Origin: Hyaloraphidium curvatum SAG 235-1
Lineage: Eukaryota; Fungi; Monoblepharomycota
Assembly (NCBI GenBank): GCA_025558095.1
Contig: JAIVFI010000012.1
Span: 62,001 to 126,000, forward strand
Length of the DNA: 64,000 nt
Direction of reading: 5' to 3'
The notes under the pieces are model-generated. The model was not told the origin of the DNA. It saw only the letters and a program-made list of their open reading frames with translations, and made no database searches. Made by a program: the position numbers and the translations under genes. Positions 39,575-55,473 of the stretch are shown piece after piece (the stretch's first letter is position 1; each line of letters starts with the position of its first letter).

Positions 39575-41713
39575 ATGGAACATGGATATCCTTGGCACGA
39601 TGCTGGACCGCCTCCCCCCGAGCTCTTCGAGCGCGTTCTCGATTTTCTCGATGCGCGGGACCTCTTCTTCTTCCGCCTGGTCTGCCGGCAGGCGTTCTCC
39701 ACCGCCAGCTCGGCGCTCGCGGGACGCGTTCGACAACTGGCCGTCCAACAGCGCGACCTGCCCTGCCTTTGGGACCTTCGGAACCACTTGTGCATCTTCT
39801 TTGCGAAACGCATCGGGGGCTTCGCCGAAAAGCGGACTTTTCCCCCGCGCGCTTTCGGCAGACTTCTGGTGTCGTGCGGGGCACCCGCCGACGGCATAGT
39901 TGCGCTCCACGTGTTCAAGGGGTACCTGCAGTCGTTCGACGAGGAAGCAGGTTCCTTCTTTTCGGGCTTGGGCGCTGACACTACGGTCCTGCGCGGGTTC
40001 CTCGAGCTCGTGCCAGGCGACGAGTGGGGCCCTTCCGAGCACGTCGCGGCGATGCTGCGGGCGACTGGACTACCGGAGCACGAGCTCAAGGCCGCCATTA
40101 TTGAATCGGAAGCTTACTCGGCTACCTGGAAGTGGTCCGTCGTGGCGCAACTGGAGCGCTGGCTGGACGGGTTTGTCCCGGGATCCCTCGAGCTGCCGAG
40201 CGAAAAAGAGCGGGCGGGAATGCTGGCAATGTTCGACGACGTGGCTGACTGGGACGAGCCGGAAGAGGTAGCCGCGGCAGTTCTCTGCGACCTGGGCGGC
40301 GATTGCATCGCGGCGGCCGCGAAGCTTTGCCTTTGGAATTGGCACGAGGTTGGGCGCTTGGTCATTACCTACTTCCGGCACCTGCATGGCCTGGGCGAGG
40401 AGGCTTACCGGGGCGCATTTCTTTCTTGCGGCGCTTCTACGTAGAAGAGCGCCTCCCCTGCCTGCCCGGGCTTCGTCGGGAGTTCTTTCGCGGATTGCTC
40501 AACCGCGAGCAGTACCCCGAGTCGTCCTCGTCTCTCGTGGCAGGCCTTTTCGTCGACGAACTGTTTCCTCCTGATCTCCGACTTCAAGCTACTGCCTTCT
40601 TGGTCGAACCGCGCAATCATGTCACCGTCGACCTTCTTCGCAAAATCGTCTCGGATCCACGACAGTGCGACCTTGGCCGTCTTAGGAACTTCTTTTCGGC
40701 AATCATACTGGACGAGAGGGTGCTCGTCAAGGCATTCGGCAAGAGCAAGCAGGGAGACGTGCACGCGAGGATCAGGACCATCTTGGAAGCTTCCAACCTT
40801 TCCGTCCCGTCACTCGCGAGCAGCCTGGTTCTCTCCCGCGACACGACCATGGTGGACTGGTTCCCAGACAGCTCTTTTGGAACGTCGCCGACCGATGTCG
40901 GACGTCTCATTGGCCAGCTTTTGGTCCTGTTTGGGACGTCACGATACATGGTTCGAAGTGGCAAGGCGACGCGCTTGATCCACCACCTGCTCCTCCCGCG
41001 GCGTTCGCAGGTGTCGAAGAAGGAATGGATTCGCGCTTTGGGGAATGCTTTGGAGGGCGTCTTTGCAACCCTCATCGAGGATGGGAAGGAAGCCGCCTTT
41101 GGCATCTTGAGCATGGGCGCCTTCCTTGGCGTGCTGCAACGCCAGTTCGAGCTCTACAAGGATCTGGTCTCCATCATTGCGTGCGATGTCCGTGTGCGGC
41201 AGAAGATTCTCAAGTTCGGGGATCTTCGCGCTCTTCTCGTGGGCAGAACCGGCTACATCGGAGATGGCACAACCCTGTGGGAGGCTTGGTCGTGGGAGCC
41301 GCTCGCTGCCGGGTTTCCACCCGTTCTGTGGCTCGAGACAGCTGGGATCGGGAACGACATGGACTTGGAGATGACGATCGCCGAGCGACACCTTGCGCTC
41401 ACCCAGCTCTGGTGGCGGTTGCCCCTGTTCAACATTCGACGCGAATGCCCCCGCCTCCACCCTCCCTTCGGCAAATTCTTCCACCACCCCACGGTCGCGG
41501 ACTTCCGCGCTGTCTCGGAGAATGTCGTCGGCGAGCCCAAGGACATCGAGCTCGCTCTCCAGGTTCGCCGTCGACGCTGCCGGCCCTACCTCGAAGCGTA
41601 CCTTTTTCTAGGTGAACGAAGGGCGGATCGACGATGCGGTCGAGGCGCTCAAGCGGACGGGGGCCAAGGTCAAGCCTTCGATGGCGACCATCGTCCGGAT
41701 CTCTTTGGCCTAG
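39575..41713 (+). CDS. F-box protein (lineage-specific, multi-exon)
   Basis: PPELFERVLDFLDARDLFFFRLVCR F-box; frame switch near 40444; last intron ~41563-41610. Confidence 0.65.
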
Positions 41714-41831
41714 AAGGAGGTCGGGTCGGAACTGGAATCAACGCCTTGGACCAACATCAGGCACATTGAAGCGGCAGTTTGGCCTCTAGTCTAGCCGTCT
41801 ACTGTGTACATGAATCCAACGCGAAGATGGT

Positions 41832-44800
41832 CTACTTCTGCCTGAAGTTGCAGAACCACAGGGCCAGGTACGCCAAAAGGAACCACCCGATCCCGGTGAT
41901 GAAGCCGACGGCGATGTAGAAGCCTTCCAAGACCGTCAGCTTCCGGACTCTGACCTTGACGCGGAACAAGCTCACCGTTGCTGGTGGTGTTGTAGTGATC
42001 GATGCCGAAACCGACTATTGCGTTGGTCGAGTTGCGGATCCACCCTGGAGAACGGAGGCGTTAGGACACCTCGCCCAAAGCGGCCCGAGGATTCAGCTCA
42101 CAGTCGAGAGCCAGGATGTTTGCGGCATACTCTTCGCCCGAGTTGATGGCGCAGACGCTGAAGGGAGAAGATTAGGCAAAGCGTCGACGACAAACAGGTC
42201 AGAACCTACTAAGTGATGGGCAGGGGGTTGGCGACGAGGTAGTTGCCGAAGCCCATGAGCGCGGCGGCGCGCACGGTCTGGTTTAGAGAGGTCTGGAGCG
42301 CATCCTCCGACGAAACAGGGATCGCGACCGCGGCCGAGAAGGCCGCGCGGGCCGTGGCCACCAGCGAATCCAGGTTCTCGATCGTCGATGCCGGGTTGCC
42401 GGCGGTGACGGCCGAAGCCCGGGCGGTCTGGTAGCTGTTCAGCGCCCGGGCGGTGCGGTAGAGCGAGAACACCGTCTCGTTCACGGATGCGTCGGCGTTC
42501 CTCCACACGTCAAAGCTGTTGAGGGCCTGCACGATGCTGGGGTTGGCCGCGGCGGCCGTCGCAGTCAGGTTCTTGGCGGCGCCGCCGAGACCCTGCACCG
42601 CGATCGAGGTGGTCTCGAAGGGGAAGCGCTCGTTGTTGGAGGCGCAGTACAGGGGCTGGCCAACGAGCTCGTCGCGGATCATGGGCAGGTAAAGGACGCG
42701 AGCGTACCTGAAAAGAGGGCAGTCGGGTCAGTGGACCCGATGATGGAGATGACGGCCCGGGGCAACTCACGAGAACCACTGCCAGAAGACCTTGACCGAC
42801 GGGTGGCGCATGAAAAGGAACTGGTCCGTGATGTAGTACCCGCCGACGATCAGGGCGTAGTAGAAGTGCAGCGTGAAGGCGGCGTTGGCGTACGGGATCG
42901 ACGCGGCGACGTAGGCGCACAGCATGTTGAGCGCGGTGACCGAGAAGGCCTCGGGGATCATGTACCCAATGTACCGTCCGGGGTAGGCCCAATTCGACAT
43001 TGTGAACATGATCGCGCCGACGATGGCCTGGGAAAGGTGAAAGAAGGCTTCAGCGCTGCCCCGGTCGAGACGTGCTTCGCAGAACCCACCATGATTGCGC
43101 TGACGAAGATCCACTCGACGACGAACATGACGAGCGAGTGGGCCAGGCGGTGGTAGTAGCCCGCGGCCTCCTCGTGGTAGTACATCTTGCGCTTCTCGAC
43201 CCAGTAGGCGATGGCGGCCGACCCGAAGCCCGCCGTGATGAGCTTGTACGACAGGCCCTCGGCCGTGCGCCCCTCGTAGCCGCCGATGTTGCGCTGCAGG
43301 TTGAAGAAGGCGCCGCCGAAGAAGAGCGCGACGACGATGCCGGCGATGATGCGCGAGACCGACATGACCGGGTTGCGGGCGTACACGAGGACCTGCCGCT
43401 TGGCCAGCTCCCAGAGCTGCACGTAGAAGGGGGCCTGGTGGTAGAACCCGAGCCGCTCGAGCACGCCCTCCTGGGCGTCGGCGCGGGTGACGACCTCGGC
43501 GATGGAGCCCTGGCCAGAGTGGATGGCGTCGACCTTCTTGTCGAGGATGGTGGCCTCGGACGAGGCCTCCCAGGCTTCGATGAGCTTGTCGGGCTGGGCT
43601 GCGAGGGCGTCGGCGTAGATCTCGGCTGCAGAGGAGGGTTAGGAGGGGATCGCAACGACACAGGCAGTGGGGCTCACCAGGGTTGCCGGCGACGAGGACG
43701 CCGAGGTTCTCGAAGTACAGGATGGCGTCCACGACGCGGCCAAAGTAGCAGAGCCTGCCCTTGGCCAGCAGCAGCAGGTAGTCGAACTGCGACAGGATGG
43801 TGTACGAGGGCTGGTGGATGGTGGCCACGCAGGCCAGCTTGCGTAGGCGGGTGACCTCGACGACGTTGGCGATGATCTCGCGGCCGGTGTTGGAGTCCAG
43901 GCCGGTCGTGGGCTCGTCGAGGAAGAGCACCGAGGCCACGGGGAGGAGCTCGAGGGCGACGTTGCAGCGCTTGCGCTCGCCGGTCGAGAGGCCGCGGACG
44001 ATGGCGGAGCCGATGCGGCGGTTCTCGCAGTAGCCGAGGCGCATGACCTCGAGGACGTCGTTGATCTGGGGAGGGGACGTGTTGGAGGTCCGGATCCCGG
44101 GGGGGGCACGGGCGGACAGACTCACCCGAGCGTCGCGCTGGGCGGCGCTGAAACTCGCGGGGAGCCGCAGCCGGGCGCCGAACTGGAGCATCTCGCGGAC
44201 CGTCAACTCGGGCGGGAGCCTGTGGGATGCGATGATCAGGCCACCGAGTCCCACGTCGAGTGATCAATCACGAACAGGTCGTCCGAGGTCACGTAGCCAG
44301 AATCCTTGACGAAGGTGCGCTTCTTCAGCAGGGCACCGTTGAGGCGCACGTCCTGGGTCCACTTTCCGGTGGTCTTGCGGAAGGCGAGCACGTCGAGGAG
44401 GGTCGACTTGCCGGCGCCCGAGGGACCCATGATGGCGAGCGTCTCGCCCGGCTGGAGGCGACGCAGGGTGGCAACGGGGCCGGCATCGTGGCGGGAGAGG
44501 AGCGAATCGCGGAGGGCGGTACGCGTGGAGGCAGCGGCGTGGTCGGCGGGGGACCGGGAAGTGAGAATTGCGCAAAGTCGGCCGGTGGCGCGGTGGTGGC
44601 CGCACCTTGCAGTAGCCCGACACGGCATCGAGGAGCACCTTCGGCTTCCCCTCCACCTTGAGCACGCAGCTGATGTCCTTGAACGAGAAGAAGGCCGGGT
44701 TCAGCTGGTTGGGATCCGTGACGGCCCAGGAGGCCAGCCGCGCGACGCGGTCGCTGGCCTTCGGCAGTTCGACCGAGGTCTCGGCCGGCGCGATGGCGGC

Positions 44801-44854
44801 CTTTTCGGCGACGGCCTCCATGGCGGGCGCGGCGAGCTGCTCGGCGGTCGACAT
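41832..44854 (-). CDS. ABCG-family half-transporter A (multi-exon)
   Basis: NBD-TMD order; GPSGAGKST, GLSTGERKR, LFLDEPTTGLDS, TIHQPS; TMD with a large insert before the last TM; ends CNFRQK. Confidence 0.92.
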
Positions 44855-45290
44855 CGGGGGAGACGAGTGCGATCGGCGGCGCTCGGAAGCGGATCGTCGG
44901 CTCGTCGGATGAGGCTCAATTGTCACATGGGGGGACTGCGGAAGGGCACCTGTTGCGAAATTAAAGCAAAACCTAAAAGCCCGCATGAGGGTCTACGTGC
45001 ATGAACGTACCTATCAGAGCATTGATTGCAATGCCAGGCTCTAGAAAAAGGTGAAAACAGCGTCGGAGCCAAAGGGTACGGTGAGTCGGGAGTTTGCTCC
45101 CTGGTAGCCGTGGTACCCCAGCTTCGTCGGGGGGGGATTCGGGGGTGCGGCCGCACACACATGCCCGAGCGGCTTGACCTCCGACAGCCCAAAGCCCGGA
45201 AAAACCCGGCTCCGTGCTGCCGTCGCGCTGCGCTAACTCACTCCCGCTGAAGCCCGGTCTCCCATCGCAGACCGACGAACTCCAGTCGCG
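44855..45290. promoter_or_regulatory. Putative bidirectional promoter of the ABCG pair
   Basis: 436 bp between divergent ATGs; locally AT-richer. Confidence 0.6.
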
Positions 45291-47952
45291 ATGGCCGCCG
45301 CCGCTGCTGCCCCCGAACCCGCGGGCGACGCCGTCCGCCCGGCGCCCCCGGCCGGCTACACGGTGGGTCCAGAGGCTAAATTCACCGAGCTGCGCTCACA
45401 CGCCCGACGCGGCCTCGTCAGGTTACGTGGGAGAACGTCAACTGCCGGATCAAGACGGGGAGCATCTTCGCGAAGGAGAAGAAGGTCGTCCACTCGCTCA
45501 TCGACAACTCGGGCTTCGCGCGGCCGGGCGAGTCGCTCGCCGTCATCGGGCCGTCGGGCGCGGGCAAGACCACGCTCGTCGGTGGGTGTCTTCTTGGGCC
45601 GGGCGGCGCCGGCGACGCGTCGCTCTCAGATGCGGGGACGCGTCGACCGGCGAATCTGCCTGTTTGCCTTTTATTCGGAGCTGATCGCCTCCATGCCGCA
45701 GACATCCTGTCGCAGCGCAAGTCGCTGGGCGAGATCACCGGCGAGGTGCTCGTCAACGGCCAGAAGCCCGACGAATTCTACAAGAAGCGGCTCGGCCAGA
45801 TCTCGGTGCTCATGGCACACATCCCGACAATGACCGTGCGCGAGACGCTCATGTTCGCCGCCGAGTGCCGCATGCCCCGCGGCACCACCAAGGAGGAGCG
45901 CATCGCGCGCGTCGACGAGGTCATCGCCGGCCTCAAGCTCACCAACGCGCAGAACACGCCCGTCGGCGACGAGCTGATCCGCGGCGTGTCGTCGGGCGAG
46001 AAGAAGCGCACCGAGGTCGCCACCGAGATGATCGCCCGCCCGCGCATGCTGTTCCTCGACGAGCCGACCTCGTGGGTAACAAGTGCGGGAAGGAATCCGC
46101 TTCACGCACCGCTGACCGCCTTCCGCACTCCCCAGTGGTCTCGATGACTTTGGCGCGCGCTTCACCATGGAGCTCGTGCTGCAGTACGTCAAGTCCGAGA
46201 ACGTCTGCGTCATCATCGTCATCCACCAGCCCGCCGAGGCCGTCTTCAACCTGTTCGACAACACCATGATCATCTGCGAGGGCCGCACCTGCTACTTCGG
46301 CCCCACCAAGGTCGCCGAGTCGTACTTCGCCACCATGGGCTACCCGACGCCCAAGCTGCAGAACCCCATCGAGCACTACCGTGGGGTCGCGCTCCCCACC
46401 TGTACTCACAGCCGATGCTGATCTCGCGCTCGTCCCCAGTCGACGTCTGCTCCGCCAACGCCATCGCCGCCGCCGACTACTACTCCTCCTCGCCCCTGGC
46501 CCAGGCCAACCTGGCCGAGGTCCAGCGGCTGAAGGCGCAGCGCTACGAGTCGGTGCGCTACTCGGAGCACCTCGTCGAGCGCCCGTGGTACGACCAGGTC
46601 AAGCTCCTCGGACACCGCACCCTGCTCCGCTACTGGCGCAACCCGTCGACCTCGTGGGGGCGGCTGTTCATGTTCACCCTGCTCGGCATCCTGTTCGGCG
46701 TGTTCTTCCTGAGCGTAAGTCTTCGCTCGTTGCCGGGGTAGCTAGCTTTCTGATCCCAATTGGTTCTGCAGCTCGACAACACCACCACGGGCATGCGCAA
46801 CCGGCTCTCGGTCTCGACCACGTTCACCTTCCTCGCCATCTATGTCGCGATCGCCGCCGTGCCGCAGTTCCTCGAGGACCGCGAGCTGTACCTGCAGGAG
46901 CTTGACACGGCCTTCTACTCGACCTGGCCCTACTGGATCACCTACCTCGTCATCGAGGGCTGCATGACCTCGATCATCACCACCATCCAGCTCTTGATCA
47001 TTTGGCCCATGGCCGGCTTCAGCTGGGAGCCCTTCGGGAACGTGTACGCGATGATGTTCCTCCAGTTCTGGTTGGCGACTGCTATTTCGCAGGCCTGGTC
47101 GGCCTGGTGCAAGACGCTGGTGCAGGCCTTCACGGCGCTCTGGGCCGCCGGCCTGATCTTCTACGCCTTCTCGGGGGCGCAGGCGCCGCTCAACATCGTC
47201 ACGCCGGCGCTCAGGTGGCTCGCGGACATCAACTACTGGCGCTGGTGCCTGCAGTACGTCGTGGGTGTCCTTTCTGTCCGCTACTCGCCCCGGTCATCCC
47301 GTCTGACCGCGGCTCCATCTCCAGATCTGGCAGATCATGAAGGACTACATCGTCGACTGCGTCCGCACCCCCTCGACAGGCTTCGTCCTCCCCGCCGCCC
47401 GCGGCTTCGTCGGCGCGCTCAACAACACCTTCGTCGGCGAGCCCGGCAACGCCGTCAACGTCGCGCAGTTCTGGCGCGGCGTCGGAATCATGCGCGCCAA
47501 CGCGGCCACCTCCAACGCCCCGACCGTCACCGACGCCACCCGCGCCGACCTGCTGGCCAACACCAACGCCGCCGCCCAGCTCATCGCGCCGATCGCCAAC
47601 CAGTCGTCCTTCGGGCCGGCTCCGGCGCAGTACGCCCCGGCCGTGGGCGCCTTCGACCTCTACTTCAACACTTCGACCTCGGCGCTCGAGGTCGCCACCA
47701 ACGCCGCCATCTTCCCGGCCGGGTACTACTGCCCGTACGGCCAGGGCGCGGACTTCATCAGGCGGTTCCGCGACCTGTCGCCCGAGAACCCGGCGGCGAC
47801 CAACGTCTCGTTTGCGGTGGTGGGTTGCCTGGTGCCGCCCGACGGCGGGCTTAGCTGACGTCCCGTCCCTCCAGAACGCCGCGCTGTTCGTCTTCTTCGC
47901 GTTTATGACGTTGGCGGGCCTGATGTTCTCGCGCAACTACCGCAAGAGGTAG
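45291..47952 (+). CDS. ABCG-family half-transporter B (multi-exon)
   Basis: GPSGAGKTT, GVSSGEKKR, LFLDEPTS|GLD, IIHQPA; TMD with a large insert before the last TM; ends SRNYRKR. Confidence 0.92.
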
Positions 47953-48378
47953 AGGGCTGGATTGGACCGCTTTGGCATTTTGTAGACTCTAGAAAGCTAG
48001 AATGCACGGGCCGATCGCGGACGGCTCCGAATACAGTCTTCTGACGTGACGTGTCTTCAGCGATGTGCCTTCGGGCCAACCCCAATCCGGCTTGGCTGTG
48101 CTGGAGGCGAATCCGATGGGGAGCTGAGGACGGTCCCCGGTTGCTTCTGACGTGCGCTGGGGGATACAAGGCAGCTCCAGAAACCTTCCGCGCTTTCCGA
48201 TCGCGGAGAAGAGGGACAACGATGCGCGCACCGTGGAGTCTTGAAGGCGGGGACCGGCCAACTTGCCGCACGGCCGGCCGAACCGCAATAACTGCGCAAT
48301 AACACCGCCACGGCGCCATTCCAGTCGCCCCGGCGGCCTTCCACGCAACTAGACAGTGGTTTTGTGACGCTAAAGGAG

Positions 48379-49170
48379 ATGGCACTGAGCCTGCGATCGG
48401 TAGTCGCGACCCGCGAGGGGGCACGCCCCCGAGTCCGGCGGCACGGCGTTGCCGCGTGGTGCCTTGCAGCCACCGCCTGGGTGCTCCTTCTCGCCGCGCC
48501 CGCACCGGCGGCGGCCGCGTTTCTCAACATTGACGCACGTTTCGACACGGTTCAGTGCCCCGTCACCAGGGGTCGCCTTTCTTCCCTCCTCGTCTCCAGC
48601 TTCTTCGGTTGCCGTGTGGGGTACGCGCGCGGCTTTGCCGCCGGCAGGACGTCGTGCATCGCCACCAGGGCAAGCACCGCCCGCTGGTGCAGCTCCAACG
48701 GAAACGCGACCCCCGTCTTGTGGAACGTTACCAACCGCGTGATCGGGTGGCCTTCCGACGCCGGCTTCCCGACCGTCGCGCAGGAGAGCCTGCGCCGCGT
48801 CAGGATCGCCTACACCAGGAACGTTGCTCGCGGCACGGTGTGCCCGACCCAAGTCAGAGTTACGGGCCTCACACAGTTCACGAACGCCAGCTTCACGTTC
48901 GCCCCCGCCGCCGCGACATGTCCTCTCGGCAACGAAATAAGGTGCACCTTGACACCATCGACCGGCATCATCACCATTTTTGCTTGTGGACCGCTCGGTG
49001 GGCTTTGCGGTCGAACACGATCTCCGCTGTCGTCGCTTACTTCGTTCCCGCGCCGCAGGAACGCATCCCCTCCTCTTTCCCTTACCTACAACAGCTACCC
49101 GCACGACGACTCGCACGAAATCGACGGTAGGGGGGGCAACGTCGGCAGCAGAAGGTGCTTTTCACGCTGA
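48379..49170 (+). CDS. Secreted Cys-rich hypothetical protein; 3' end uncertain
   Basis: Hydrophobic signal segment ending APAAAA; about 9 Cys; probable intron near 48998-49058 leading into TATRTTTRTKST. Confidence 0.55.
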   Translation: MALSLRSVVATREGARPRVRRHGVAAWCLAATAWVLLLAAPAPAAAAFLNIDARFDTVQCPVTRGRLSSLLVSSFFGCRVGYARGFAAGRTSCIATRASTARWCSSNGNATPVLWNVTNRVIGWPSDAGFPTVAQESLRRVRIAYTRNVARGTVCPTQVRVTGLTQFTNASFTFAPAAATCPLGNEIRCTLTPSTGIITIFACGPLGGLCGRTRSPLSSLTSFPRRRNASPPLSLTYNSYPHDDSHEIDGRGGNVGSRRCFSR

Positions 49171-49347
49171 GTGCATGGCCGACAGAGGACAACACGGACC
49201 TCGAACACCACAGCCTGCGACTAGAAGCATCGAACGTTCCGAAACGTCCGGCCCTCAGGAATCAACCTACCCGCGCCGTGATCTCCATCGGCGTGCCGAG
49301 AACGTCTCTCCGAGTCTTTCTGAACACCGCCGTGCTGCCTGCACGCG

Positions 49348-50700
49348 ATGCCGGCCCCCACGCCCTTCCGTGTCGAGGCGACGCCCGCCCAGCTCGCACG
49401 CCTCGAGTCGCGTCTCCGGGACGTCGTATACCCCGAAGTCGATCTCCCCGATGCCGACACGTGGGCATACGGCATGCCAACGCGCGTTTTGGAGAAACTA
49501 GTCGAGCACTGGCGCGACAAGTGGGTGTCTCCCATTCTGGGACACGTCGCCCGGCACTCAGCGGCCCCGCCAGGTACGACTGGCCAGCCTGGGAGGCCAA
49601 GATCAACTCGTTCTCGCACTACAAGCTCCGTTGCAACGACGTCGACGTGCACTTCATCCACCATCCCTCCCCGCGGCGGGACGCGGTCCCGCTCATTCTC
49701 ATCCACGGATGGCCCGGCACCTTCGTCGAGTTCCTGGACCTCATTAAGACGCTCGCGGAGCCAGAGGCCGGACAGCAGGCGTTTCACGTGGTGGTTCCCA
49801 GCCTGCCAGGCTACGGGTTCTCCGGAAGGCCGACGCGGAAGGACTACTCGCTCGTTGAGGCGGCCAAGGCTTTCGACGAGCTGATGAAGAGCCTGGGGTA
49901 TGGCAGGTACATGGCCCAGGGCGGTGATTGGGGCAGCGCTGTAGCCAAGGCGCTGGCCATCGTCTGTCCGGACTCGTGTCGCGCGATCCACGTAGGTCGC
50001 CATCGCCTATTCTGCGGCTCCTGAGCTGACCTTCAGTTAGCTCAACTTGCTCTGGTTCGAACCCCCACCCGAGGATGCATCCGTCGCCCCGCCCACCGAC
50101 GCCGAAAAGCGCAAGCTCGCCGCCGGTGCCGAGTTCATGGTCACCGGGACGGGGTACCAGCGCATCCAGGCGACGAAGCCGCTGACGCTCGGCGCGGCGC
50201 TTGCGGACAGCCCCGTGGGGCTGCTGGCCTGGATCGGCGAGAAGTTCCACGAATGGGTTGACCTGCGCGGCGGGGACGGCGACTTCTCGCCGACCGTATC
50301 GACAGAGGTGCTTCTCACCAACGTTATGGTCTACTACCTCAGGTGCTGCGGCTCCCCGTGCAACTAATTCACCCTTCCGTTGCTGACGTTCAACGCCGTA
50401 TCATGCAGCAACTCCATCACTTCCTCGTTCTTCCTCTACCACTATCAGTTCCTGAAGAACCTCGACCAGGCCCTCCTGGGCTCCAATATCTTGCAGCCCG
50501 TCGGTTGTTCCGCTTTCCCGCACGACCTCGTGGTGGCACCGCGGAGCTGGGTCGAGTACAGGTGCCCCAACCTGGCATTCTGGAGCGCGCCGGAGGACGG
50601 GGGACACTTTGCCGCTTTGGAAAAAGGTGACGTGCTTGTGCGCGATCTGAGGGCGTTTGCGGGGGTGCCGGAGGTGAAGGCGAGCCTGGGAGGCCAGTAA
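49348..50700 (+). CDS. Epoxide hydrolase copy 2 (no PTS1; ends -GGQ)
   Basis: Same motifs (HGWPG, GGDWG, GGHFAALE) and same three intron positions as copy 1. Confidence 0.92.
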
Positions 50701-50791
50701 TACCGCGACGGCGGGCGCGGGCTCCTCGAACCCGGCCAGCGATTGAGGCTCAACGATCTTGCTATCCTTTTGTGAATTACAAAGCGCACGA

Positions 50792-51886
50792 TCAGGCAAA
50801 CACCTCCCCCTTGAACAGCGCCCTCGCCGACCGAACGAACCCCACCGACACCGCCCTCCACCTCCCCTCGACCTCCACTGCCTGGGCTCTCGCCTCGATC
50901 AGCCCCCCCGGATGCGCGATCACCGTCCTCCCCGCCCTTTTCGGCCCCCCGGCCCTCGCCGCAAATGCATGCGCCACGGTCCCTGGGATCCCGGCCGCGA
51001 GCGCCAGCGCCGACGACCCCGTGCCGGTCATGGCGTGGTGGTACCTCCTTCCAGGGGTCGTTATCCGCGCGTACAGGTCTGCCTGTCCCGGGGAGATTGG
51101 GTCGCCGGAGGAGGTGGAGTACGAGTCGGGTTCACGGAGAAGGGCCGCGCGGACGGCCGGGGAAAGAGGGATGCCCATGAGGTGGGCACCGTGTTCGCGG
51201 AGGGAGGCGAGCCAGGCGTCGATGTCGACGTCAACGGGTCGCGAAGATTCTGCGACGATAATTGTCGGGTTTGGTTGGCCGATGAGGGTGGTACGGGGCG
51301 ATCCCGCGCAGTTGGCGAGGACGTCCACCACATTCCCGGTCGGCAGCAGCGGCACCTGCGGTCCTTCTCCGTCCCCGTCGCCGCTGCCGAGGAAAGTCAC
51401 ATCCACGGCCGGCTCCTTCCGCCCCGGAACCCCCGAAATCTCCACCAGCTCGTCCGGTTTCTCTTCGACCAGAAGTTCCTTCCCCGCGCCGATCTGCCAC
51501 ACCCTAGCGCGCAGCATCGACGGCGGCACGATCTGCAGCACATCCCTCGCGTGCAGCAGCGTCGCCGAGGCCAGGTTCCCGCACGACCCTTTCCAGTCGA
51601 TCTTCCCGTCCTTGATCCCGACCTGGCCAAACTCCCAGTCCAGGTCGAAGCCCTCCCTCGCCGATTTCCCGATGATGCACACCTTGCTCGACGAGGAGAT
51701 GGCGCCTCCCACCCCGTCCATCTGCATCCCGGACGCGTCGGGGGATCCCAGCGCCCGGGAGATGAACGCGTCGCGGCGCGCGAGGTCGGCGCCGAACGCG
51801 GCGTGGAGGTCAGCTGATCCGAAAAAGAGGCCTTTCGAGGTGCCGCCGCGGATGAGGGCGGCCGGGACCGCGAGCATCTGGCGCAT
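50792..51886 (-). CDS. PrpF/DUF453-family isomerase
   Basis: IRGGTSKGLFF, GSPD..GMQMDGVGGAISSSSKV, GSCGNL, HHAMTGTG, RSARALFKGEV; intronless. Confidence 0.88.
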   Translation of the reverse strand: MRQMLAVPAALIRGGTSKGLFFGSADLHAAFGADLARRDAFISRALGSPDASGMQMDGVGGAISSSSKVCIIGKSAREGFDLDWEFGQVGIKDGKIDWKGSCGNLASATLLHARDVLQIVPPSMLRARVWQIGAGKELLVEEKPDELVEISGVPGRKEPAVDVTFLGSGDGDGEGPQVPLLPTGNVVDVLANCAGSPRTTLIGQPNPTIIVAESSRPVDVDIDAWLASLREHGAHLMGIPLSPAVRAALLREPDSYSTSSGDPISPGQADLYARITTPGRRYHHAMTGTGSSALALAAGIPGTVAHAFAARAGGPKRAGRTVIAHPGGLIEARAQAVEVEGRWRAVSVGFVRSARALFKGEVFA

Positions 51887-52219
51887 TTCCGGAGCCCTTT
51901 GGTGTTCGCAGTAAGGCTTGTTTACGCAGTGAGGGCGTGGCCAGCCTTGAGCAGGCGCCAGCTAGCAGTTCCGAGGATCATTGGACGAAGGAATCATGAG
52001 ACGCTGTTGTCGTTGTAGTGACGATGCGCGCTTCGCTGCTCCATGTCTTCGCTCTTGCGACCTCGGTGCACAGCCCGCGGGGCAAACTCGATCGACAAGC
52101 TCGAGAAGGTGGCAACGCTTCCGGCCTTCGTCGCCCAGACACGCCGCGCAACGATATCAGCGGCGCGGTGGCAACGTCTCTCAATCCGTCCTGAACCGCT
52201 CCGGCGCCTCCTGCACGGG

Positions 52220-53595
52220 ATGCCGGCCCCGACTCCCTTCCGCGTCCAGGCGACGCCCGCCCAGCTCGCGCGGCTCAAGTCGCGCCTCCAAGACGTGGAC
52301 TATGCCGAAATCGACCTCCCTGATGCCGACACGTGGGCGTACGGCATGCCGCCACGGGTGCTGAAGAAGCTGGTCGAGCATTGGCGCGACAAGTGGGTGT
52401 CTCCCCCTCTCCGACGCGTCCGTCCGCATTCACAGCGCCCGACAGGTACGACTGGACCGCGTGGCAGGCCAAGATAAACTCGTTCGCGCACTACAAGCTG
52501 CGCTGCAACGACGTCGACGTGCACTTCATCCACCACCCCTCCCCGCGGCCGGACGCCGTGCCGCTCATCCTCACGCACGGGTGGCCCGGCTCGTTCGTAG
52601 AGTTCCTGGACGTGATCAAGCCGCTCGCAGAGCCAGAGGCCGGCCAGCAGGCGTTCCACGTGGTGGTTCCCAGCCTGCCAGGCTACGGGTTCTCCGGGAG
52701 GCCTACGCGGAAGAACTACGCGATCGTCGAGACGGCCAAAGCCTTCGACGAGCTGATGAAGAGCCTGGGGTACAGCAGGTACATGGCCCAAGGCGGCGAT
52801 TGGGGAAGCCTGGTGACCAAGGCGCTGGCCATCACCTGCCCCGAGTCGTGCCGGGCGATCCACGTGGGTTGCCCCCTCCTTCCTAGGCTGATCCCCCTCC
52901 CAACGCTGACCCCACGCTCCGCTTCCTATCAGCTCAACATGCTCGCCTTCAGACCGCCGCCGGAGGACGCACCCATCCCCCCGCTCACCGATGCCGAGAA
53001 GAGCAAGCTCGCCGCCGGCGCCCAGTTCAACGCCACGGGGACAGGATACCAGCAAATCCAGGCAACGAAGCCGCAGACGCTTGGTGCGGCGCTCTCGGAC
53101 AGCCCGGTCGGGCTGCTGGCCTGGATCGGGGAAAAGTTCCACGAATGGGTCGACCTCAGCGGCGGGGACGGCGACTTCTCGCCGAACGTTTCCACGGATG
53201 TTCTGCTGACGAACGTGATGGTCTACTACATCAGGTGAAGACTTCTGCCGCCGCCGGCCTGCCAAACTCACCACTTGCCGCCGTTCCGCAGCAACTGCAT
53301 CACCTCCTCCTTCTTCCTCTACCACTACCAGTTCCTTAAGCGCCTCGATGGGCGCCTCCTCGGCTCCAAGATCCTGCAGCCCGTGGGGTGCTCGGCCTTC
53401 CCCCACGACATCATGGTTCCCCCGCGGAGCTGGGTCCAGCACTCCTGCCCCAACCTCGCCTTCTGGAACGACCCGGCGGAGGGCGGGGGCCACTTTGCAG
53501 CTTTGGAGAGGGGGCACGTGCTGGTGCGCGATCTGAGGTCGTTTGCGGGGTTGAATGAAGTGAAGGCGAGCCTGGGAGGAAAGAGCAAGCTGTGA
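52220..53595 (+). CDS. Epoxide hydrolase copy 3, PTS1 -SKL
   Basis: Same motifs and introns as the other copies; ends GGKSKL-TGA. Confidence 0.93.
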
Positions 53596-53814
53596 GGGCG
53601 CATGCGTGTTCCAGAGACCAGCTCGCCGCTTTCGGCTCGCTGTTGGCACGATCGGTTGGATGCCCTAGATTTGTACGGCGTCGTTCTCATCCCAAACCCG
53701 ATTTCGGCCCGAAGCTCCGGCCGGATGCTTTGAATGGCCGACACGTGGGCCATCTTTGGGTCCAGCGGGCTGTGCCGCCCGCAAGAACTGGTTACTCTCG
53801 TCAGGCGCCACGCG

Positions 53815-55473
53815 ATGCCCCGCCTCGCGTTCGCACTTCTGCTGGCGCTGGCGCCTGCCGCGGTGCATGCGGCCACGTTCGTCGCGTGGTCGCCGTCGCT
53901 CTCGGCCACCGGCGCGAACCCCGACAACCTGCCGCCCGCGTTCGAGTTCCGGCCGTCGACCGTGCTCGCGCCCGAGCGCCGCCGGAACAACGCGCTGATT
54001 CCCTTCGACGACGGGCCGGACGGCGGCGGAGCGCTCGTGCTCGACGAGGCGCCGGCGACGATCGGCTACCGCCAGCCGGACGGCGCGCCCGACGCCGAGG
54101 GGCCGTTTTCCATCCCGCAAAGGTTCATCCGCACCTTGGACATGCGGCCGCACTTCGACGCGATAGACGCCCTGAGGAAGAAGCACAAGAGGGCCGAGCT
54201 GACCTGCGCACGCATCGAGTCCCGCGCACGGAAGGCGGCGCCAGGCGACACCCACCTGCTCCTGATATGCACGGATAGCCAGTTCCTTGTGAATTACCTC
54301 ATCGATCTGGGCGAGAAGATAAAGCTGCACACTAACGGCAGACGCGCGCGGGGGCAAGACCCTGCGGTGCCTGCGACGGGCGTTGGGCACGGGCAGGTGT
54401 TCGCCGCCTTCCCCGAGGCTCACAGAACGACGTTGGAGGCTGGTAATTGCTACAAGCTTCTGACCGCCAACTGCGAAAATACCGAGAAGCCGCTTCCGGC
54501 GCAGATGGAGGATCGCCAGGGTGGATACAAGGTCGGAACGTGCCAGAAAGAAACCAGCTGTGCCGGCTTCGGCATGGGCACCATTCCCGTCATCATGATG
54601 GGGTACAAATCAAAAGTGGGCAGCACGTCCACGGCGATGTGGGTGCGGAGGACGCGCGGGGCGGTGACGAGCGTCATCCTCGCGTTCAAAGGCACGAGCT
54701 CGGGAACCGAAGCGTTTGCGGACGTGAACCTGCTCAGCAAGGCATTCTTGGAACGCTGGCGCGTGATGCATCTGGGTAGCGGCCTGCCCAAGGCCACGGC
54801 CGCCGCGTATGGCGCCGTCAAGGCCATCTCTGAAGGGCACCAAAAGTACCTCCATTTCATCGCCGATGTCGTGAACAACGAGCTCATCCCGCTGCTCAAG
54901 AACGAGGCGGGCGAGTTCAGGGCAAACGTCTACGTCTACTTGACCGGGGTCAGCCTCGGCGGCTTCATGGCCCAGCTCGTTGGTCTCCACCTCATCGCCG
55001 TCGGCTTCGAGAACGTCTACGTGAACTCGATCTCGGGCCCGGGCGCGGTGCTGGCCTACCTCGGCCTCGCGGAAACCATGTTCGGCGCCGCGCCGCCCGG
55101 GGGCCCGCGGTGGCCCCAGCAGCCGGAGCGCTTCGTCAACGTGATGCAGTTCTTCGACTGGATCCCGCGCCTGGGTCGGCAGCCGGGCTTCTCGTGCTTC
55201 TCCTACGACGACACGGAGGTGGTCACGGGGGGCCACGCCGACGACGTCTGCGGGCTCTGGGGCAACCTGCAGAGCACGGGGCTGACGGGCAGCGTCCCGC
55301 TCGGGAAAGGAGCCTGCATGAAGATCCACAACGTGGGGGATAACCTGATGCCGAGTCCCAACACGTTTTGCTGCCAGGCTGGGGCAACATGGTGCGGGCT
55401 GTACATTCCCCCGGTTGCAGCAGGGGCGAGGGGCGGGCGGCGGTTACGGCGCGCGCAAATGGAACGGGCTTGA
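53815..55473 (+). CDS. Secreted class-3 lipase-like alpha/beta hydrolase with long N-terminal extension
   Basis: Signal peptide MPRLAFALLLALAPAAVHA; ILAFKGT, LTGVSLGG (GxSxG), DWIPR, KIHN. Confidence 0.8.
   Translation: MPRLAFALLLALAPAAVHAATFVAWSPSLSATGANPDNLPPAFEFRPSTVLAPERRRNNALIPFDDGPDGGGALVLDEAPATIGYRQPDGAPDAEGPFSIPQRFIRTLDMRPHFDAIDALRKKHKRAELTCARIESRARKAAPGDTHLLLICTDSQFLVNYLIDLGEKIKLHTNGRRARGQDPAVPATGVGHGQVFAAFPEAHRTTLEAGNCYKLLTANCENTEKPLPAQMEDRQGGYKVGTCQKETSCAGFGMGTIPVIMMGYKSKVGSTSTAMWVRRTRGAVTSVILAFKGTSSGTEAFADVNLLSKAFLERWRVMHLGSGLPKATAAAYGAVKAISEGHQKYLHFIADVVNNELIPLLKNEAGEFRANVYVYLTGVSLGGFMAQLVGLHLIAVGFENVYVNSISGPGAVLAYLGLAETMFGAAPPGGPRWPQQPERFVNVMQFFDWIPRLGRQPGFSCFSYDDTEVVTGGHADDVCGLWGNLQSTGLTGSVPLGKGACMKIHNVGDNLMPSPNTFCCQAGATWCGLYIPPVAAGARGGRRLRRAQMERA

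What the first reader, a model, noticed from the sequence alone, without database searches (positions are those of the whole stretch)
41832..47952. Head-to-head pair of divergent ABCG half-transporters: an ABCG5/ABCG8-like heterodimer locus in a probable fungus
Seen: two non-identical NBD-TMD half-transporters with ATGs 436 bp apart and no gene between them. Known: half ABCGs must dimerise, and the vertebrate sterol exporter ABCG5/ABCG8 is an obligate heterodimer encoded head-to-head from a short bidirectional promoter; most fungal ABCGs are full-size PDR types or unlinked halves. Inference: a co-regulated heterodimeric lipid/sterol exporter, either an ancient opisthokont arrangement or a convergent one.
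Basis: partly seen in the sequence, partly recalled or inferred. Interest (0 to 1): 0.82.

Follow-up and report, generated by a model that had tools for sequence, protein, structure and literature searches.

The report
Conserved head-to-head ABCG half-transporter pair
Two different half-size membrane pumps are encoded back-to-back in this aquatic fungus, and the same two-gene unit occurs 14 times in its genome and in other chytrid fungi, so the two halves almost certainly work as one pump, laid out like the human cholesterol pump ABCG5/ABCG8 but with no sign of being its direct relative.

Summary
Gene A (minus strand, 804 aa) and gene B (plus strand, 727 aa) are intact, spliced, expressed ABCG half-transporters of Hyaloraphidium curvatum. 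Their ATGs are separated by 436 bp with nothing between. They are 30% identical.

The genome holds 14 such A/B head-to-head pairs. The A tree and the B tree mirror each other, and both partners stay under purifying selection. The same A/B unit is head-to-head in Gonapodya, Synchytrium, Zopfochytrium and Chytridiales sp. JEL0842. In a few chytrids the two genes are unlinked. Every one of the roughly 13 species with one type also has the other. This supports an obligate A·B heterodimer, inferred rather than shown.

It is probably not an ABCG5/G8 orthologue. A and B are each other's closest relatives among the ABCGs sampled. Both score PDR C-halves > ABCG2 > G8 > G5. Neither has the one-sided degenerate ATP site of G5/G8.

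Family hallmarks are loss of the Q-loop glutamine in both halves, S(T/S)GE signatures, and a 170-220-aa extracellular loop, which in A is a confidently modelled helical domain with no fold match.

Two other first-reader notes flagged such pairs elsewhere in this genome. A sterol substrate has no support.

The parts
41832..44854 (-). Gene A, an ABCG half-transporter (NBD-TMD) of 804 aa. Coding exons: 44854-44606, 44451-44275, 44218-44126, 44065-43678, 43625-43089, 43026-42769, 42705-42210, 42157-42101, 42043-41976, 41923-41832 (stop included).
   Evidence: The translation is identical to P0156. Eight of the nine coding introns are seen as CT..AC joints in RNA contigs. The last intron, 41924-41975, was read from the sequence. 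Pfam gives ABC_tran plus ABC2_membrane. The AF2 model has mean pLDDT 83.8, and Foldseek matches ABCG2 at TM 0.80.
44948..45457 (-). 5' leader of an A-strand transcript: a 5'UTR intron at 44948-45008 and an upstream exon at 45009 to at least 45457. This exon overlaps B's ATG, exon 1, intron 1 and the start of exon 2 in antisense.
   Evidence: X1 contig record 3 joins 44684-44947 to 45009-45457 with a minus-strand GT..AG intron, and it leaves B's intron 1 unspliced. No in-frame ATG lies upstream of 44854. The library is unstranded and assembled, so this is provisional.
44855..45290 (.). Shared 436-bp region between the two start codons. It contains an A+T-richer patch near 44955-45050 and a GTCTCCC motif about 10-30 nt upstream of each ATG on each gene's sense strand.
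   Evidence: Sequence read. No Rfam hit. The k-mer TGTCTCCC/GGGAGACA occurs in 8 of 11 non-redundant paralogous inter-gene regions, against a maximum of 6 in shuffles. This is a weak signal.
45291..47952 (+). Gene B, an ABCG half-transporter (NBD-TMD) of 727 aa. Exons: 45291-45362, 45422-45581, 45702-46071, 46136-46380, 46440-46714, 46772-47260, 47325-47818, 47874-47952 (stop included).
   Evidence: The translation is identical to P0168. The last four introns are seen as GT..AG joints in RNA contigs. The first three introns were read from the sequence and agree with the NCBI model. Pfam gives ABC_tran plus ABC2_membrane.
41916..42769 (-). Coding region (with introns) of A's extracellular loop 3, residues about 568-777. 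The model shows a helical domain (helices 599-618, 640-668, 673-694, 701-726). The loop carries all 5 N-glycosylation sequons and the invariant pair Cys588/Cys735.
   Evidence: pLDDT is 85-94 in the full-length model and 87.4 in the domain-only model. Loop length is 184-222 aa in all A-types, against 40-99 aa in PDR halves. No PDB or ESM-Atlas fold match was found.
47325..47818 (+). Exon 7 of B, which encodes B's extracellular loop 3 (residues about 538-701). It holds 4 of B's 5 sequons, plus Cys549 (invariant in the B family) and Cys673.
   Evidence: Loop length is 168-191 aa in all B-types. Only the first ~40 columns align with A's loop by profile comparison (hhalign probability 93%). B's loop was not modelled.
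44284..44286 (-). Codon of Ser139 in A, at the position of the Q-loop glutamine.
   Evidence: Alignment column. The residue is S in 17 of 18 A-types. It is Q in 21 of 22 other half-size ABCGs and in 20 of 24 PDR halves.
45806..45808 (+). Codon of Val113 in B, at the position of the Q-loop glutamine.
   Evidence: Alignment column. The residue is V, T, Y or A in all 22 B-types, never Q.

Best explanation
The locus encodes the two subunits of one ABCG-type exporter. A and B are ancient paralogues that most likely arose by an inverted duplication of a single half-transporter gene before chytrid fungi diversified. Corallochytrium also has one of each, so the split may be older. They have since been inherited and duplicated as a two-gene unit.

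Each half supplies one nucleotide-binding domain and one six-helix membrane domain, and the working pump is the A·B heterodimer. Divergent transcription from a ~0.4-kb shared region would give matched expression. The two long extracellular loops (a helical domain in the model of A) would sit side by side above the exit of the translocation path.

Both ATP sites are built alike. Walker A Lys, Walker B Asp-Glu and H-loop His are kept. The Q-loop Gln is lost and the signature reads S(T/S)GE. So the pump is pseudo-symmetric rather than one-site-dead like ABCG5/G8 or PDR pumps.

Fourteen diverged pairs in one genome suggest diversification of substrates (lipophilic compounds or xenobiotics), as in PDR expansions.

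Shown: the gene structures, expression, paired duplication, synteny, motif states and the fold of A. Inferred: heterodimerisation, co-regulation, direction of transport and substrates.
For: (1) Fourteen of 14 family members in the genome are head-to-head A/B pairs, and no orphan was found.
(2) The A and B trees of the 13 closer pairs have the same clades. Across species, the A and B clades each show Corallochytrium at the base and three mirrored chytrid subclades.
(3) dN/dS is 0.04-0.42 in both partners, and dN/dS and dS are similar for the two partners within each comparison.
(4) The head-to-head A/B order is kept in Gonapodya (two loci), Synchytrium microbalum, Zopfochytrium polystomum and Chytridiales sp. 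JEL0842, with the minus-strand partner being A-type in every case.
(5) Where the genes are unlinked (C. lagenaria, Dinochytrium, Irineochytrium), both types are still in the genome. A-type and B-type co-occur in all ~13 species that have either.
(6) Both genes are transcribed and spliced.
(7) Catalytic motifs are conserved in both partners of every pair.
(8) The extracellular loops diverge about twice as fast as the cores, and in step between partners (r = 0.94). This is suggestive only.
Against: No physical or genetic test of dimerisation exists, and no multimer prediction was possible with these tools. Mirror trees and matched rates are expected from co-duplication alone, so they show joint inheritance rather than contact. 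Linkage has been lost in some chytrids, so it is not indispensable. The RNA data are assembled contigs that cannot rank expression or prove co-regulation. An A-strand transcript overlapping B's 5' end could mean interference rather than a simple shared promoter. Loss of the Q-loop Gln and a variant signature in both sites could mean weak ATPase activity or a non-pump role. The substrate is unknown.
Confidence: 0.7

Rival explanations
1. A and B are independent homodimeric half-transporters. On this reading the head-to-head order is a relic of an inverted tandem duplication. It persists because segmental duplications copy both genes and because a shared promoter is convenient, not because the proteins need each other.
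For: All catalytic motifs are equally intact in A and in B, so neither looks like a dependent, degenerate partner. Well-studied relatives such as ABCG2 work as homodimers (structures listed). Linkage has broken in C. lagenaria, Dinochytrium and Irineochytrium without loss of the genes.
Against: Among 14 paralogous units, differing by up to ~55% in protein sequence, not one has lost a partner. A-type and B-type co-occur in every species that has either, subclade by subclade. The order is conserved between Monoblepharomycota and Chytridiomycota.
Confidence: 0.17
2. The pair is orthologous to metazoan ABCG5/ABCG8. On this reading one head-to-head pair existed in the opisthokont ancestor, and both the chytrid A/B pair and the animal sterol pump descend from it.
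For: The layout is the same, and that layout is conserved from humans to arthropods (PMC3724490). Both A-like and B-like genes occur in the holozoan-side protist Corallochytrium, so the A/B split may predate the fungus/animal divergence. A-types and basal B-types carry an STGE signature like ABCG5's ISTGE.
Against: Single sequences and family profiles of A and B give the same ranking: PDR C-half > ABCG2 > ABCG25/16 ~ G8 > G5 ~ G1. Both lean to G8, and neither is closer to G5/G8 than an unrelated ABCG (P0132) is. G8's degenerate Walker A and the one-sided asymmetry are absent. G5/G8 sequences could not be put into the trees, so this is not formally excluded.
Confidence: 0.08
3. The genes are decaying duplicates or an annotation artefact and have no joint function.
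For: High-GC genomes give many spurious open frames.
Against: Both models are confirmed by spliced RNA contigs and by identical NCBI proteins. dN/dS is well below 1 in both. Motifs are conserved. The AF2 model of A is confident.
Confidence: 0.01

Closest known systems
ABCG5/ABCG8 (sterolin) heterodimer of animals
   Same: Two paralogous NBD-TMD half-transporter genes lie head-to-head with a short shared upstream region, and the order is evolutionarily conserved (PMC7756502, PMC3724490). The products are likely glycosylated on extracellular loop 3. A's signature is S-T-G-E, as in ABCG5.
   Different: No detectable orthology was found. Both Walker A motifs are canonical and both signatures are variant, so the G5/G8 pattern of one dead and one live site is absent. 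The Q-loop Gln is lost in both halves. Extracellular loop 3 is about three times longer. There are 14 pairs per genome instead of one. A sterol substrate has no support.
Fungal/protist PDR full-size pumps (Pdr5, Cdr1)
   Same: These are the best-scoring solved relatives of both A and B, through their C-terminal NBD2-TMD2 half. They are pseudo-heterodimeric pumps built of two different halves. The family is expanded within genomes, which suggests xenobiotic or lipid efflux.
   Different: PDRs are single chains with a degenerate first ATP site. In the trees their N and C halves form their own clade apart from A+B. Here the two halves are separate genes on opposite strands.
ABCG2 (BCRP) homodimer
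   Same: Same fold (Foldseek TM 0.80 by target, 29% identity). Both are half-size, with a cysteine pair in extracellular loop 3.
   Different: ABCG2 is a homodimer of one gene with a canonical Q-loop and a canonical VSGGE signature. Its lineage is represented in the tree by Creolimax P0054, far from A+B.
Insect White/Scarlet/Brown and plant WBC heterodimers (from general knowledge of the family)
   Same: These are half-size ABCGs that pair with different partners to set substrate specificity.
   Different: Their partner genes are not kept head-to-head as a unit. A 'Protein white' homologue (Andalucia P0093) and a soybean ABCG15 (P0116) fall outside A+B.

Membership tests
ABCG subfamily (reverse-topology ABC half-transporters) | The nucleotide-binding domain lies N-terminal to an ABC-2 type membrane domain in one ~600-800-aa chain. 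| tested here: met
   ABC_tran followed by ABC2_membrane_7/ABC2_membrane appears in the exon pieces of both genes. The same Pfam set is recorded for P0156 and P0168.
ABCG subfamily (reverse-topology ABC half-transporters) | ABCG fold. | tested here: met
   The AF2 model of A has pLDDT 83.8. Its top 50 Foldseek hits are all ABCG structures, with ABCG2 at TM 0.80. B was not modelled; only sequence matches support it.
ABCG5/ABCG8-type heterodimer locus | Two paralogous half-transporter genes lie head-to-head with a short intergenic region, and this order is conserved in relatives. | tested here: met
   436 bp separate the ATGs. There are 14 such pairs in this genome. The same order is found in Gonapodya, Synchytrium, Zopfochytrium and JEL0842.
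ABCG5/ABCG8-type heterodimer locus | Orthology: one gene groups with G5 and the other with G8. | tested here: not met
   Both A and B, as single sequences and as profiles, score G8 above G5. Both score PDR and ABCG2 far above either. A and B are sister clades. Caveat: no G5 or G8 sequence could be placed in the tree.
ABCG5/ABCG8-type heterodimer locus | Asymmetric ATP sites: a degenerate Walker A in one partner and a degenerate signature in the other (PMC7756502). | tested here: not met
   A has GPSGAGKS / LSTGE. B has GPSGAGKT / VSSGE. Walker B DE and the H-loop His are present in both. The Q-loop Gln is absent from both.
ABCG5/ABCG8-type heterodimer locus | Obligate heterodimerisation for ER exit and activity. 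| not testable with these tools
   Only indirect support exists: co-duplication, co-retention and co-occurrence.
ABCG5/ABCG8-type heterodimer locus | Neutral sterol substrate. | not testable with these tools
   No evidence either way. Neighbouring genes (epoxide hydrolases and a lipase here, P450s and GLTP in Synchytrium) are only loosely suggestive of lipophilic chemistry.
PDR full-size ABCG pumps | (NBD-TMD)x2 in one polypeptide. | tested here: not met
   A and B are separate genes on opposite strands, of 804 and 727 aa.

The most novel reading that the evidence does not exclude
The chytrid A/B unit and the animal ABCG5/ABCG8 unit may descend from one head-to-head pair that already existed in the last common ancestor of fungi and animals. 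That would make it one of the oldest conserved bidirectional gene pairs known, with the shared S-T-G-E signature of A and ABCG5 as a relic. My similarity scores argue against this. However, G5/G8 evolve fast and could not be placed in the trees, and Corallochytrium shows the A/B split may be that old.
Probability: 0.08. Interest if true: 0.85.

Novelty: new variant of a known kind. Interest (0 to 1): 0.62.

Why it matters
ABCG half-transporters must dimerise, but outside animals almost nothing is known about how partners are chosen. ABCG5/G8 is the textbook case in which gene order mirrors the protein complex. This family is a second case and, on present evidence, an independent one. It is a two-gene unit kept head-to-head across two fungal phyla and copied as a unit 14 times in one genome.

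That gives a natural set of 14 diverged cognate pairs in one cell in which to ask what encodes partner specificity. The fast-evolving extracellular loops, which change in step between partners, are an obvious candidate.

The family also combines features not seen together in studied ABCGs. The Q-loop glutamine is lost in both halves, both signatures are variant, and each half carries a 170-220-aa extracellular loop; the model of A's loop has no recognisable fold relative. These features bear on how much of the canonical ATP-site chemistry an ABCG pump needs.

I found no description of the family in the papers I could search, including the main survey of fungal ABC proteins (PMC2848647).

Tried and rejected
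(1) Placing ABCG5/G8 in a tree.

(2) Naming ten half-size representatives in the hope of finding G5/G8-like ones gave ABCG2-like, white-like and plant-like proteins only.

(3) A motif search in the 11 non-redundant inter-gene regions mostly recovered coding k-mers (poly-Ala, the GYTV exon end, ATGGCC). Only a weak GTCTCCC element upstream of both ATGs was left.

(4) A fold search of the extracellular domain of A found nothing significant. The best Foldseek E-value was 0.2, for EmrA and Wzc periplasmic helical hairpins, and Atlas TM scores were at most 0.33.

(5) A profile comparison of the A and B loops aligned only the first ~40 columns, so homology of the rest of the two loops is not shown.

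(6) A partial Mantel test of loop co-evolution gave r = 0.90. I discount it because shared tree structure and saturation inflate such tests.

(7) An apparent frameshift in the Walker A of the C32 paralogue (L007) was an artefact of my HSP tiling. The annotated protein P0158 has GPSGAGKS.

(8) My first call to the search for homologous proteins used a stop-free open frame of a paralogue (L002:3705-5831) with the 'region' option so that full-length relatives fell inside the length window.

(9) Rfam found nothing in 41000-48600.


Full report
**1. The observation**

The window is G000:C12:62001-126000 of a 31.9-Mb, 65% G+C genome. Six-frame reading, transcriptome contigs and splice-site inspection give two genes.

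- Gene A lies on the minus strand. Its ATG is at 44854, its stop at 41834-41832, and it has 10 coding exons for 804 aa.
- Gene B lies on the plus strand. Its ATG is at 45291, its stop at 47950-47952, and it has 8 exons for 727 aa.

The joined translations were assembled only inside local scripts, to check reading frames.

The joined translations turned out to be identical to two database proteins that the searches returned. These are P0156 (NCBI DFJ74DRAFT_705299) and P0168 (DFJ74DRAFT_767128) of Hyaloraphidium curvatum. From then on I used those ids.

The organism is thereby confirmed as H. curvatum, Monoblepharomycota.

**2. Both genes are real and expressed**

Run X1 holds spliced contigs and appears to be a transcriptome (its RNA label is a guess). 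It shows 13 splice joints with the correct strand-specific GT..AG ends:

- eight of the nine coding introns of A (the ninth lay outside the stretch laid);
- one intron in A's 5' leader;
- the last four introns of B.

B's first three introns rest on the sequence, on the identical NCBI model, and on conservation of the exon-1 end ('GYTV') in paralogues.

Two oligo-dT biofilm metatranscriptomes hold fragments 95-99% alike.

One X1 contig joins 44684-44947 to 45009-45457 through a minus-strand intron, and it leaves B's first intron unspliced. An A-strand transcript therefore seems to start beyond B's ATG, which means the two transcription units overlap head-on rather than simply sharing a promoter. 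The library is unstranded and assembled, so I treat this as provisional.

Nothing else lies between the genes: no Pfam-bearing ORF and no Rfam family.

**3. What the proteins are**

Both have ABC_tran followed by ABC2_membrane. Both match only ABCG structures strongly. They are 30% identical to each other.

An AlphaFold2 model of A, built on 19 family members, has mean pLDDT 83.8. It superposes on ABCG2 at TM 0.80.

**4. The unit is a family**

Searching the genome with one exon of each gene found the same arrangement at 12 more places, with A-type and B-type divergent and adjacent. A fourteenth, more diverged pair lies on contig C40, with about 210 bp between the genes. I found no orphan A or B.

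Distances between conserved N-terminal anchors are 463-760 bp in ten of the twelve loci measured. Two are longer, at 1,145 and 1,340 bp.

The A tree and the B tree of the 13 closer pairs have the same clades: {C5a, C5b, C9, C36}, {C33, C31a, C31b}, {C10, {C16, C12, C32}}, C35, and C18 as the outlier. So the pair has always been copied as a unit.

dN/dS between paralogous pairs is 0.04-0.42 for both partners. Within each comparison, dN/dS and dS are similar for the two partners.

**5. Relatives**

An exhaustive HMMER search with a B-type exon found only 15 proteins below 1e-30. Scores then dropped to ~27%-identical PDR pumps.

Word-indexed profile searches listed the family members.

- B-types occur in Hyaloraphidium, Gonapodya prolifera and Gonapodya sp. 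JEL0774, Synchytrium microbalum, Zopfochytrium, Irineochytrium, Dinochytrium, two Phlyctochytrium species, Blyttiomyces, Chytridium lagenaria and Chytridiales sp. JEL0842.
- A-types occur in the same species. The A-type of JEL0842 was seen only in locus L015. Those of P. bullatum and C. lagenaria appear only as a fused and a partial gene model, which I did not place in the trees.
- Corallochytrium limacisporum, an opisthokont protist, also has one of each.

Genomic context shows the A(-)/B(+) head-to-head order in several genomes:

- two Gonapodya loci;
- Synchytrium (locus tags also place a second A/B pair side by side, g04082/g04083);
- Zopfochytrium;
- JEL0842.

tblastn confirms that the minus-strand partner is A-type in all five loci.

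In C. lagenaria, Dinochytrium and Irineochytrium the genes are unlinked. In Blyttiomyces a partial B-type model has no A-type next to it. These species still have both types.

**6. Phylogeny**

I built two trees: one of 86 rows (quick search) and one of 42 rows (full search). The samples were:

- A-types and B-types;
- PDR pumps split into N and C halves;
- an ABCG2-like lineage (Creolimax P0054, 476 bits to ABCG2);
- a 'white' homologue;
- plant-type and other half-size ABCGs.

A-types, together with one unnamed metagenomic protein, form a clade (100/99). B-types form a clade (100/100). The two clades sit together on one side of a 100/100 branch against everything else.

Inside each clade Corallochytrium is basal, and three chytrid subclades follow that mirror each other between A and B.

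The trees are unrooted, and ABCG5, ABCG8 and ABCG1/4 are not in them.

**7. Relation to ABCG5/G8**

I could not obtain G5/G8 as usable sequences, so I compared scores against PDB chains.

| Query | Cdr1 | Pdr5 | ABCG2 | ABCG25 | ABCG16 | G8 | G1 | G5 |
|---|---|---|---|---|---|---|---|---|
| A, single sequence (bits) | 249 | 210 | 213 | 164 | 162 | 147 | 138 | 131 |
| B, single sequence (bits) | 270 | 262 | 215 | 168 | 179 | 174 | 117 | 128 |

Family profiles give the same order for both A and B.

An unrelated half-size ABCG (P0132) scores G5 at 234 and G8 at 228, against 305 for ABCG2. So A and B are, if anything, further from G5/G8 than a generic ABCG is. Both lean the same way, towards G8, instead of one to each.

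The hallmark of G5/G8 is one dead ATP site, built from G8's GSSGCGRAS Walker A and G5's ISTGE signature (PMC7756502). Here both Walker A motifs are canonical.

I therefore read the layout as convergent, with about 8% left for ancient homology. That residue is kept alive by the STGE signature shared by A, the basal B-types and G5, and by the possible opisthokont age of the A/B split.

**8. Family hallmarks**

(a) At the Q-loop glutamine position the counts are as follows.

| Group | Residue at the Q-loop Gln position |
|---|---|
| A-types | Ser in 17 of 18 |
| B-types | Val, Thr, Tyr or Ala in 22 of 22 |
| Other half-size ABCGs | Gln in 21 of 22 |
| PDR halves | Gln in 20 of 24 |

(b) The signature is [LI]STGE in A-types and VSSGE in most B-types. 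The C40 and C18 paralogues of this genome and the Corallochytrium protein have STGE instead.

(c) Walker A Lys, Walker B Asp-Glu and H-loop His are kept in both partners of all pairs. The exception is the C40 A-like protein, whose H-loop reads HQA.

(d) The loop between TM5 and TM6 is 184-222 aa in A-types and 168-191 aa in B-types. It is 40-99 aa in PDR halves and has a median of 59 aa in other halves.

- In A the loop is modelled with pLDDT 85-98 as four long helices plus short strands.
- It carries all five N-glycosylation sequons of A and an invariant cysteine pair.
- It has no significant match in the PDB or the ESM Atlas.
- B's loop is exactly exon 7 (47325-47818). It was not modelled.
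- The loops diverge about twice as fast as the protein cores (p-distance 0.51 and 0.54 against 0.29 and 0.26), and in step between partners.

**9. Mechanism proposed**

I propose an A·B heterodimeric exporter, co-expressed from the divergent unit, with two equally non-canonical ATP sites and a two-part extracellular cap.

The 14 pairs probably differ in substrate. The loops may help each A find its own B.

All of this beyond sequence, structure prediction and synteny is inference.

The neighbouring genes are an F-box gene upstream and, downstream, two epoxide hydrolases, PrpF and a class-3 lipase. In Synchytrium the pair is flanked by two P450 genes and GLTP. These hint at lipophilic chemistry but prove nothing.

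**10. Prior knowledge**

The survey of fungal ABC proteins found only Adp1- and YOL075C-like ABCGs in the chytrid Batrachochytrium, and it does not describe this family (PMC2848647).

Searches for head-to-head fungal ABCG pairs, chytrid ABCGs and Hyaloraphidium transporters found no description.

Two other first-reader notes of this scan (s1-708478, s1-712282) flagged similar pairs on other pieces of this genome. My genome search shows they belong to the same 14-member family.

**Verdict**

The heterodimer idea is well supported comparatively but unproven. ABCG5/G8 homology and a sterol function are not supported. This is a new, distinctive ABCG subfamily: a new variant of a known kind.

Noticed in passing
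window 48364-55470: Downstream of gene B lie two paralogous microsomal-type epoxide hydrolase genes (EHN plus Abhydrolase_1; 49155-50024 and 52324-53235). Each is followed by a similar ORF containing '...ITSSFFLYHYQFLK...' (50368-50697 and 53239-53592). PrpF lies between them (50795-51961, minus strand) and a class-3 lipase follows (53734-55470). This looks like a local ~3-kb tandem duplication.
   Followed up: partly
window 39575-41769 (+): An F-box protein gene lies tail-to-tail with gene A. Earlier notes report many F-box/LRR paralogues nearby on this contig.
   Followed up: no
L002 and L003 (G000:C5:572600-580200 and 588800-596400): Two A/B pairs about 14 kb apart, in inverted orientation, are identical in both proteins. 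This is either a very recent inverted segmental duplication or an assembly duplication.
   Followed up: no
L009 and L010 (G000:C31:486600-494900 and 498600-506400): Two diverged A/B pairs sit next to each other in mirror orientation, with the B genes tail-to-tail. This shows local as well as dispersed duplication of the unit.
   Followed up: no
window 44684-45457: A transcriptome contig with a minus-strand 5'UTR intron (44948-45008) runs antisense across B's ATG and retains B's intron 1. A's leader also holds short upstream ORFs.
   Followed up: partly
window ~44865-44875 (minus strand) and ~45257-45270 (plus strand): A GTCTCCC motif sits shortly upstream of each ATG on each gene's sense strand. 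It recurs (as TGTCTCCC/GGGAGACA) in 8 of 11 paralogous inter-gene regions. It could be a shared initiator or leader element, or a genome-wide feature.
   Followed up: partly
L018 (Synchytrium microbalum QEAO01000003.1): The orthologous A/B pair is flanked by two cytochrome P450 genes on one side and a glycolipid-transfer-protein gene on the other.
   Followed up: no
L015 (Chytridiales sp. JEL 0842) and P0289 (Phlyctochytrium bullatum): Public gene models fuse the A-type transporter with a neighbour: RasGEF in a 1,756-aa model and 'aspartokinase' in a 997-aa model. These are probably annotation merges.
   Followed up: no
G000:C40:278610-280829 (-): The most diverged B-like gene (P0010) matches the genome in one unbroken stretch over residues 1-740, so it appears to have no introns there. 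The window's B gene has seven. Its A-like partner (P0280) has an altered H-loop (HQA) and Q-loop region.
   Followed up: partly
runs X2 and X3 (biofilm metatranscriptomes): Oligo-dT RNA-seq of environmental biofilms holds fragments 95-99% identical to both genes. This suggests that H. curvatum or a close relative is active there. Some fragments may come from paralogues.
   Followed up: no
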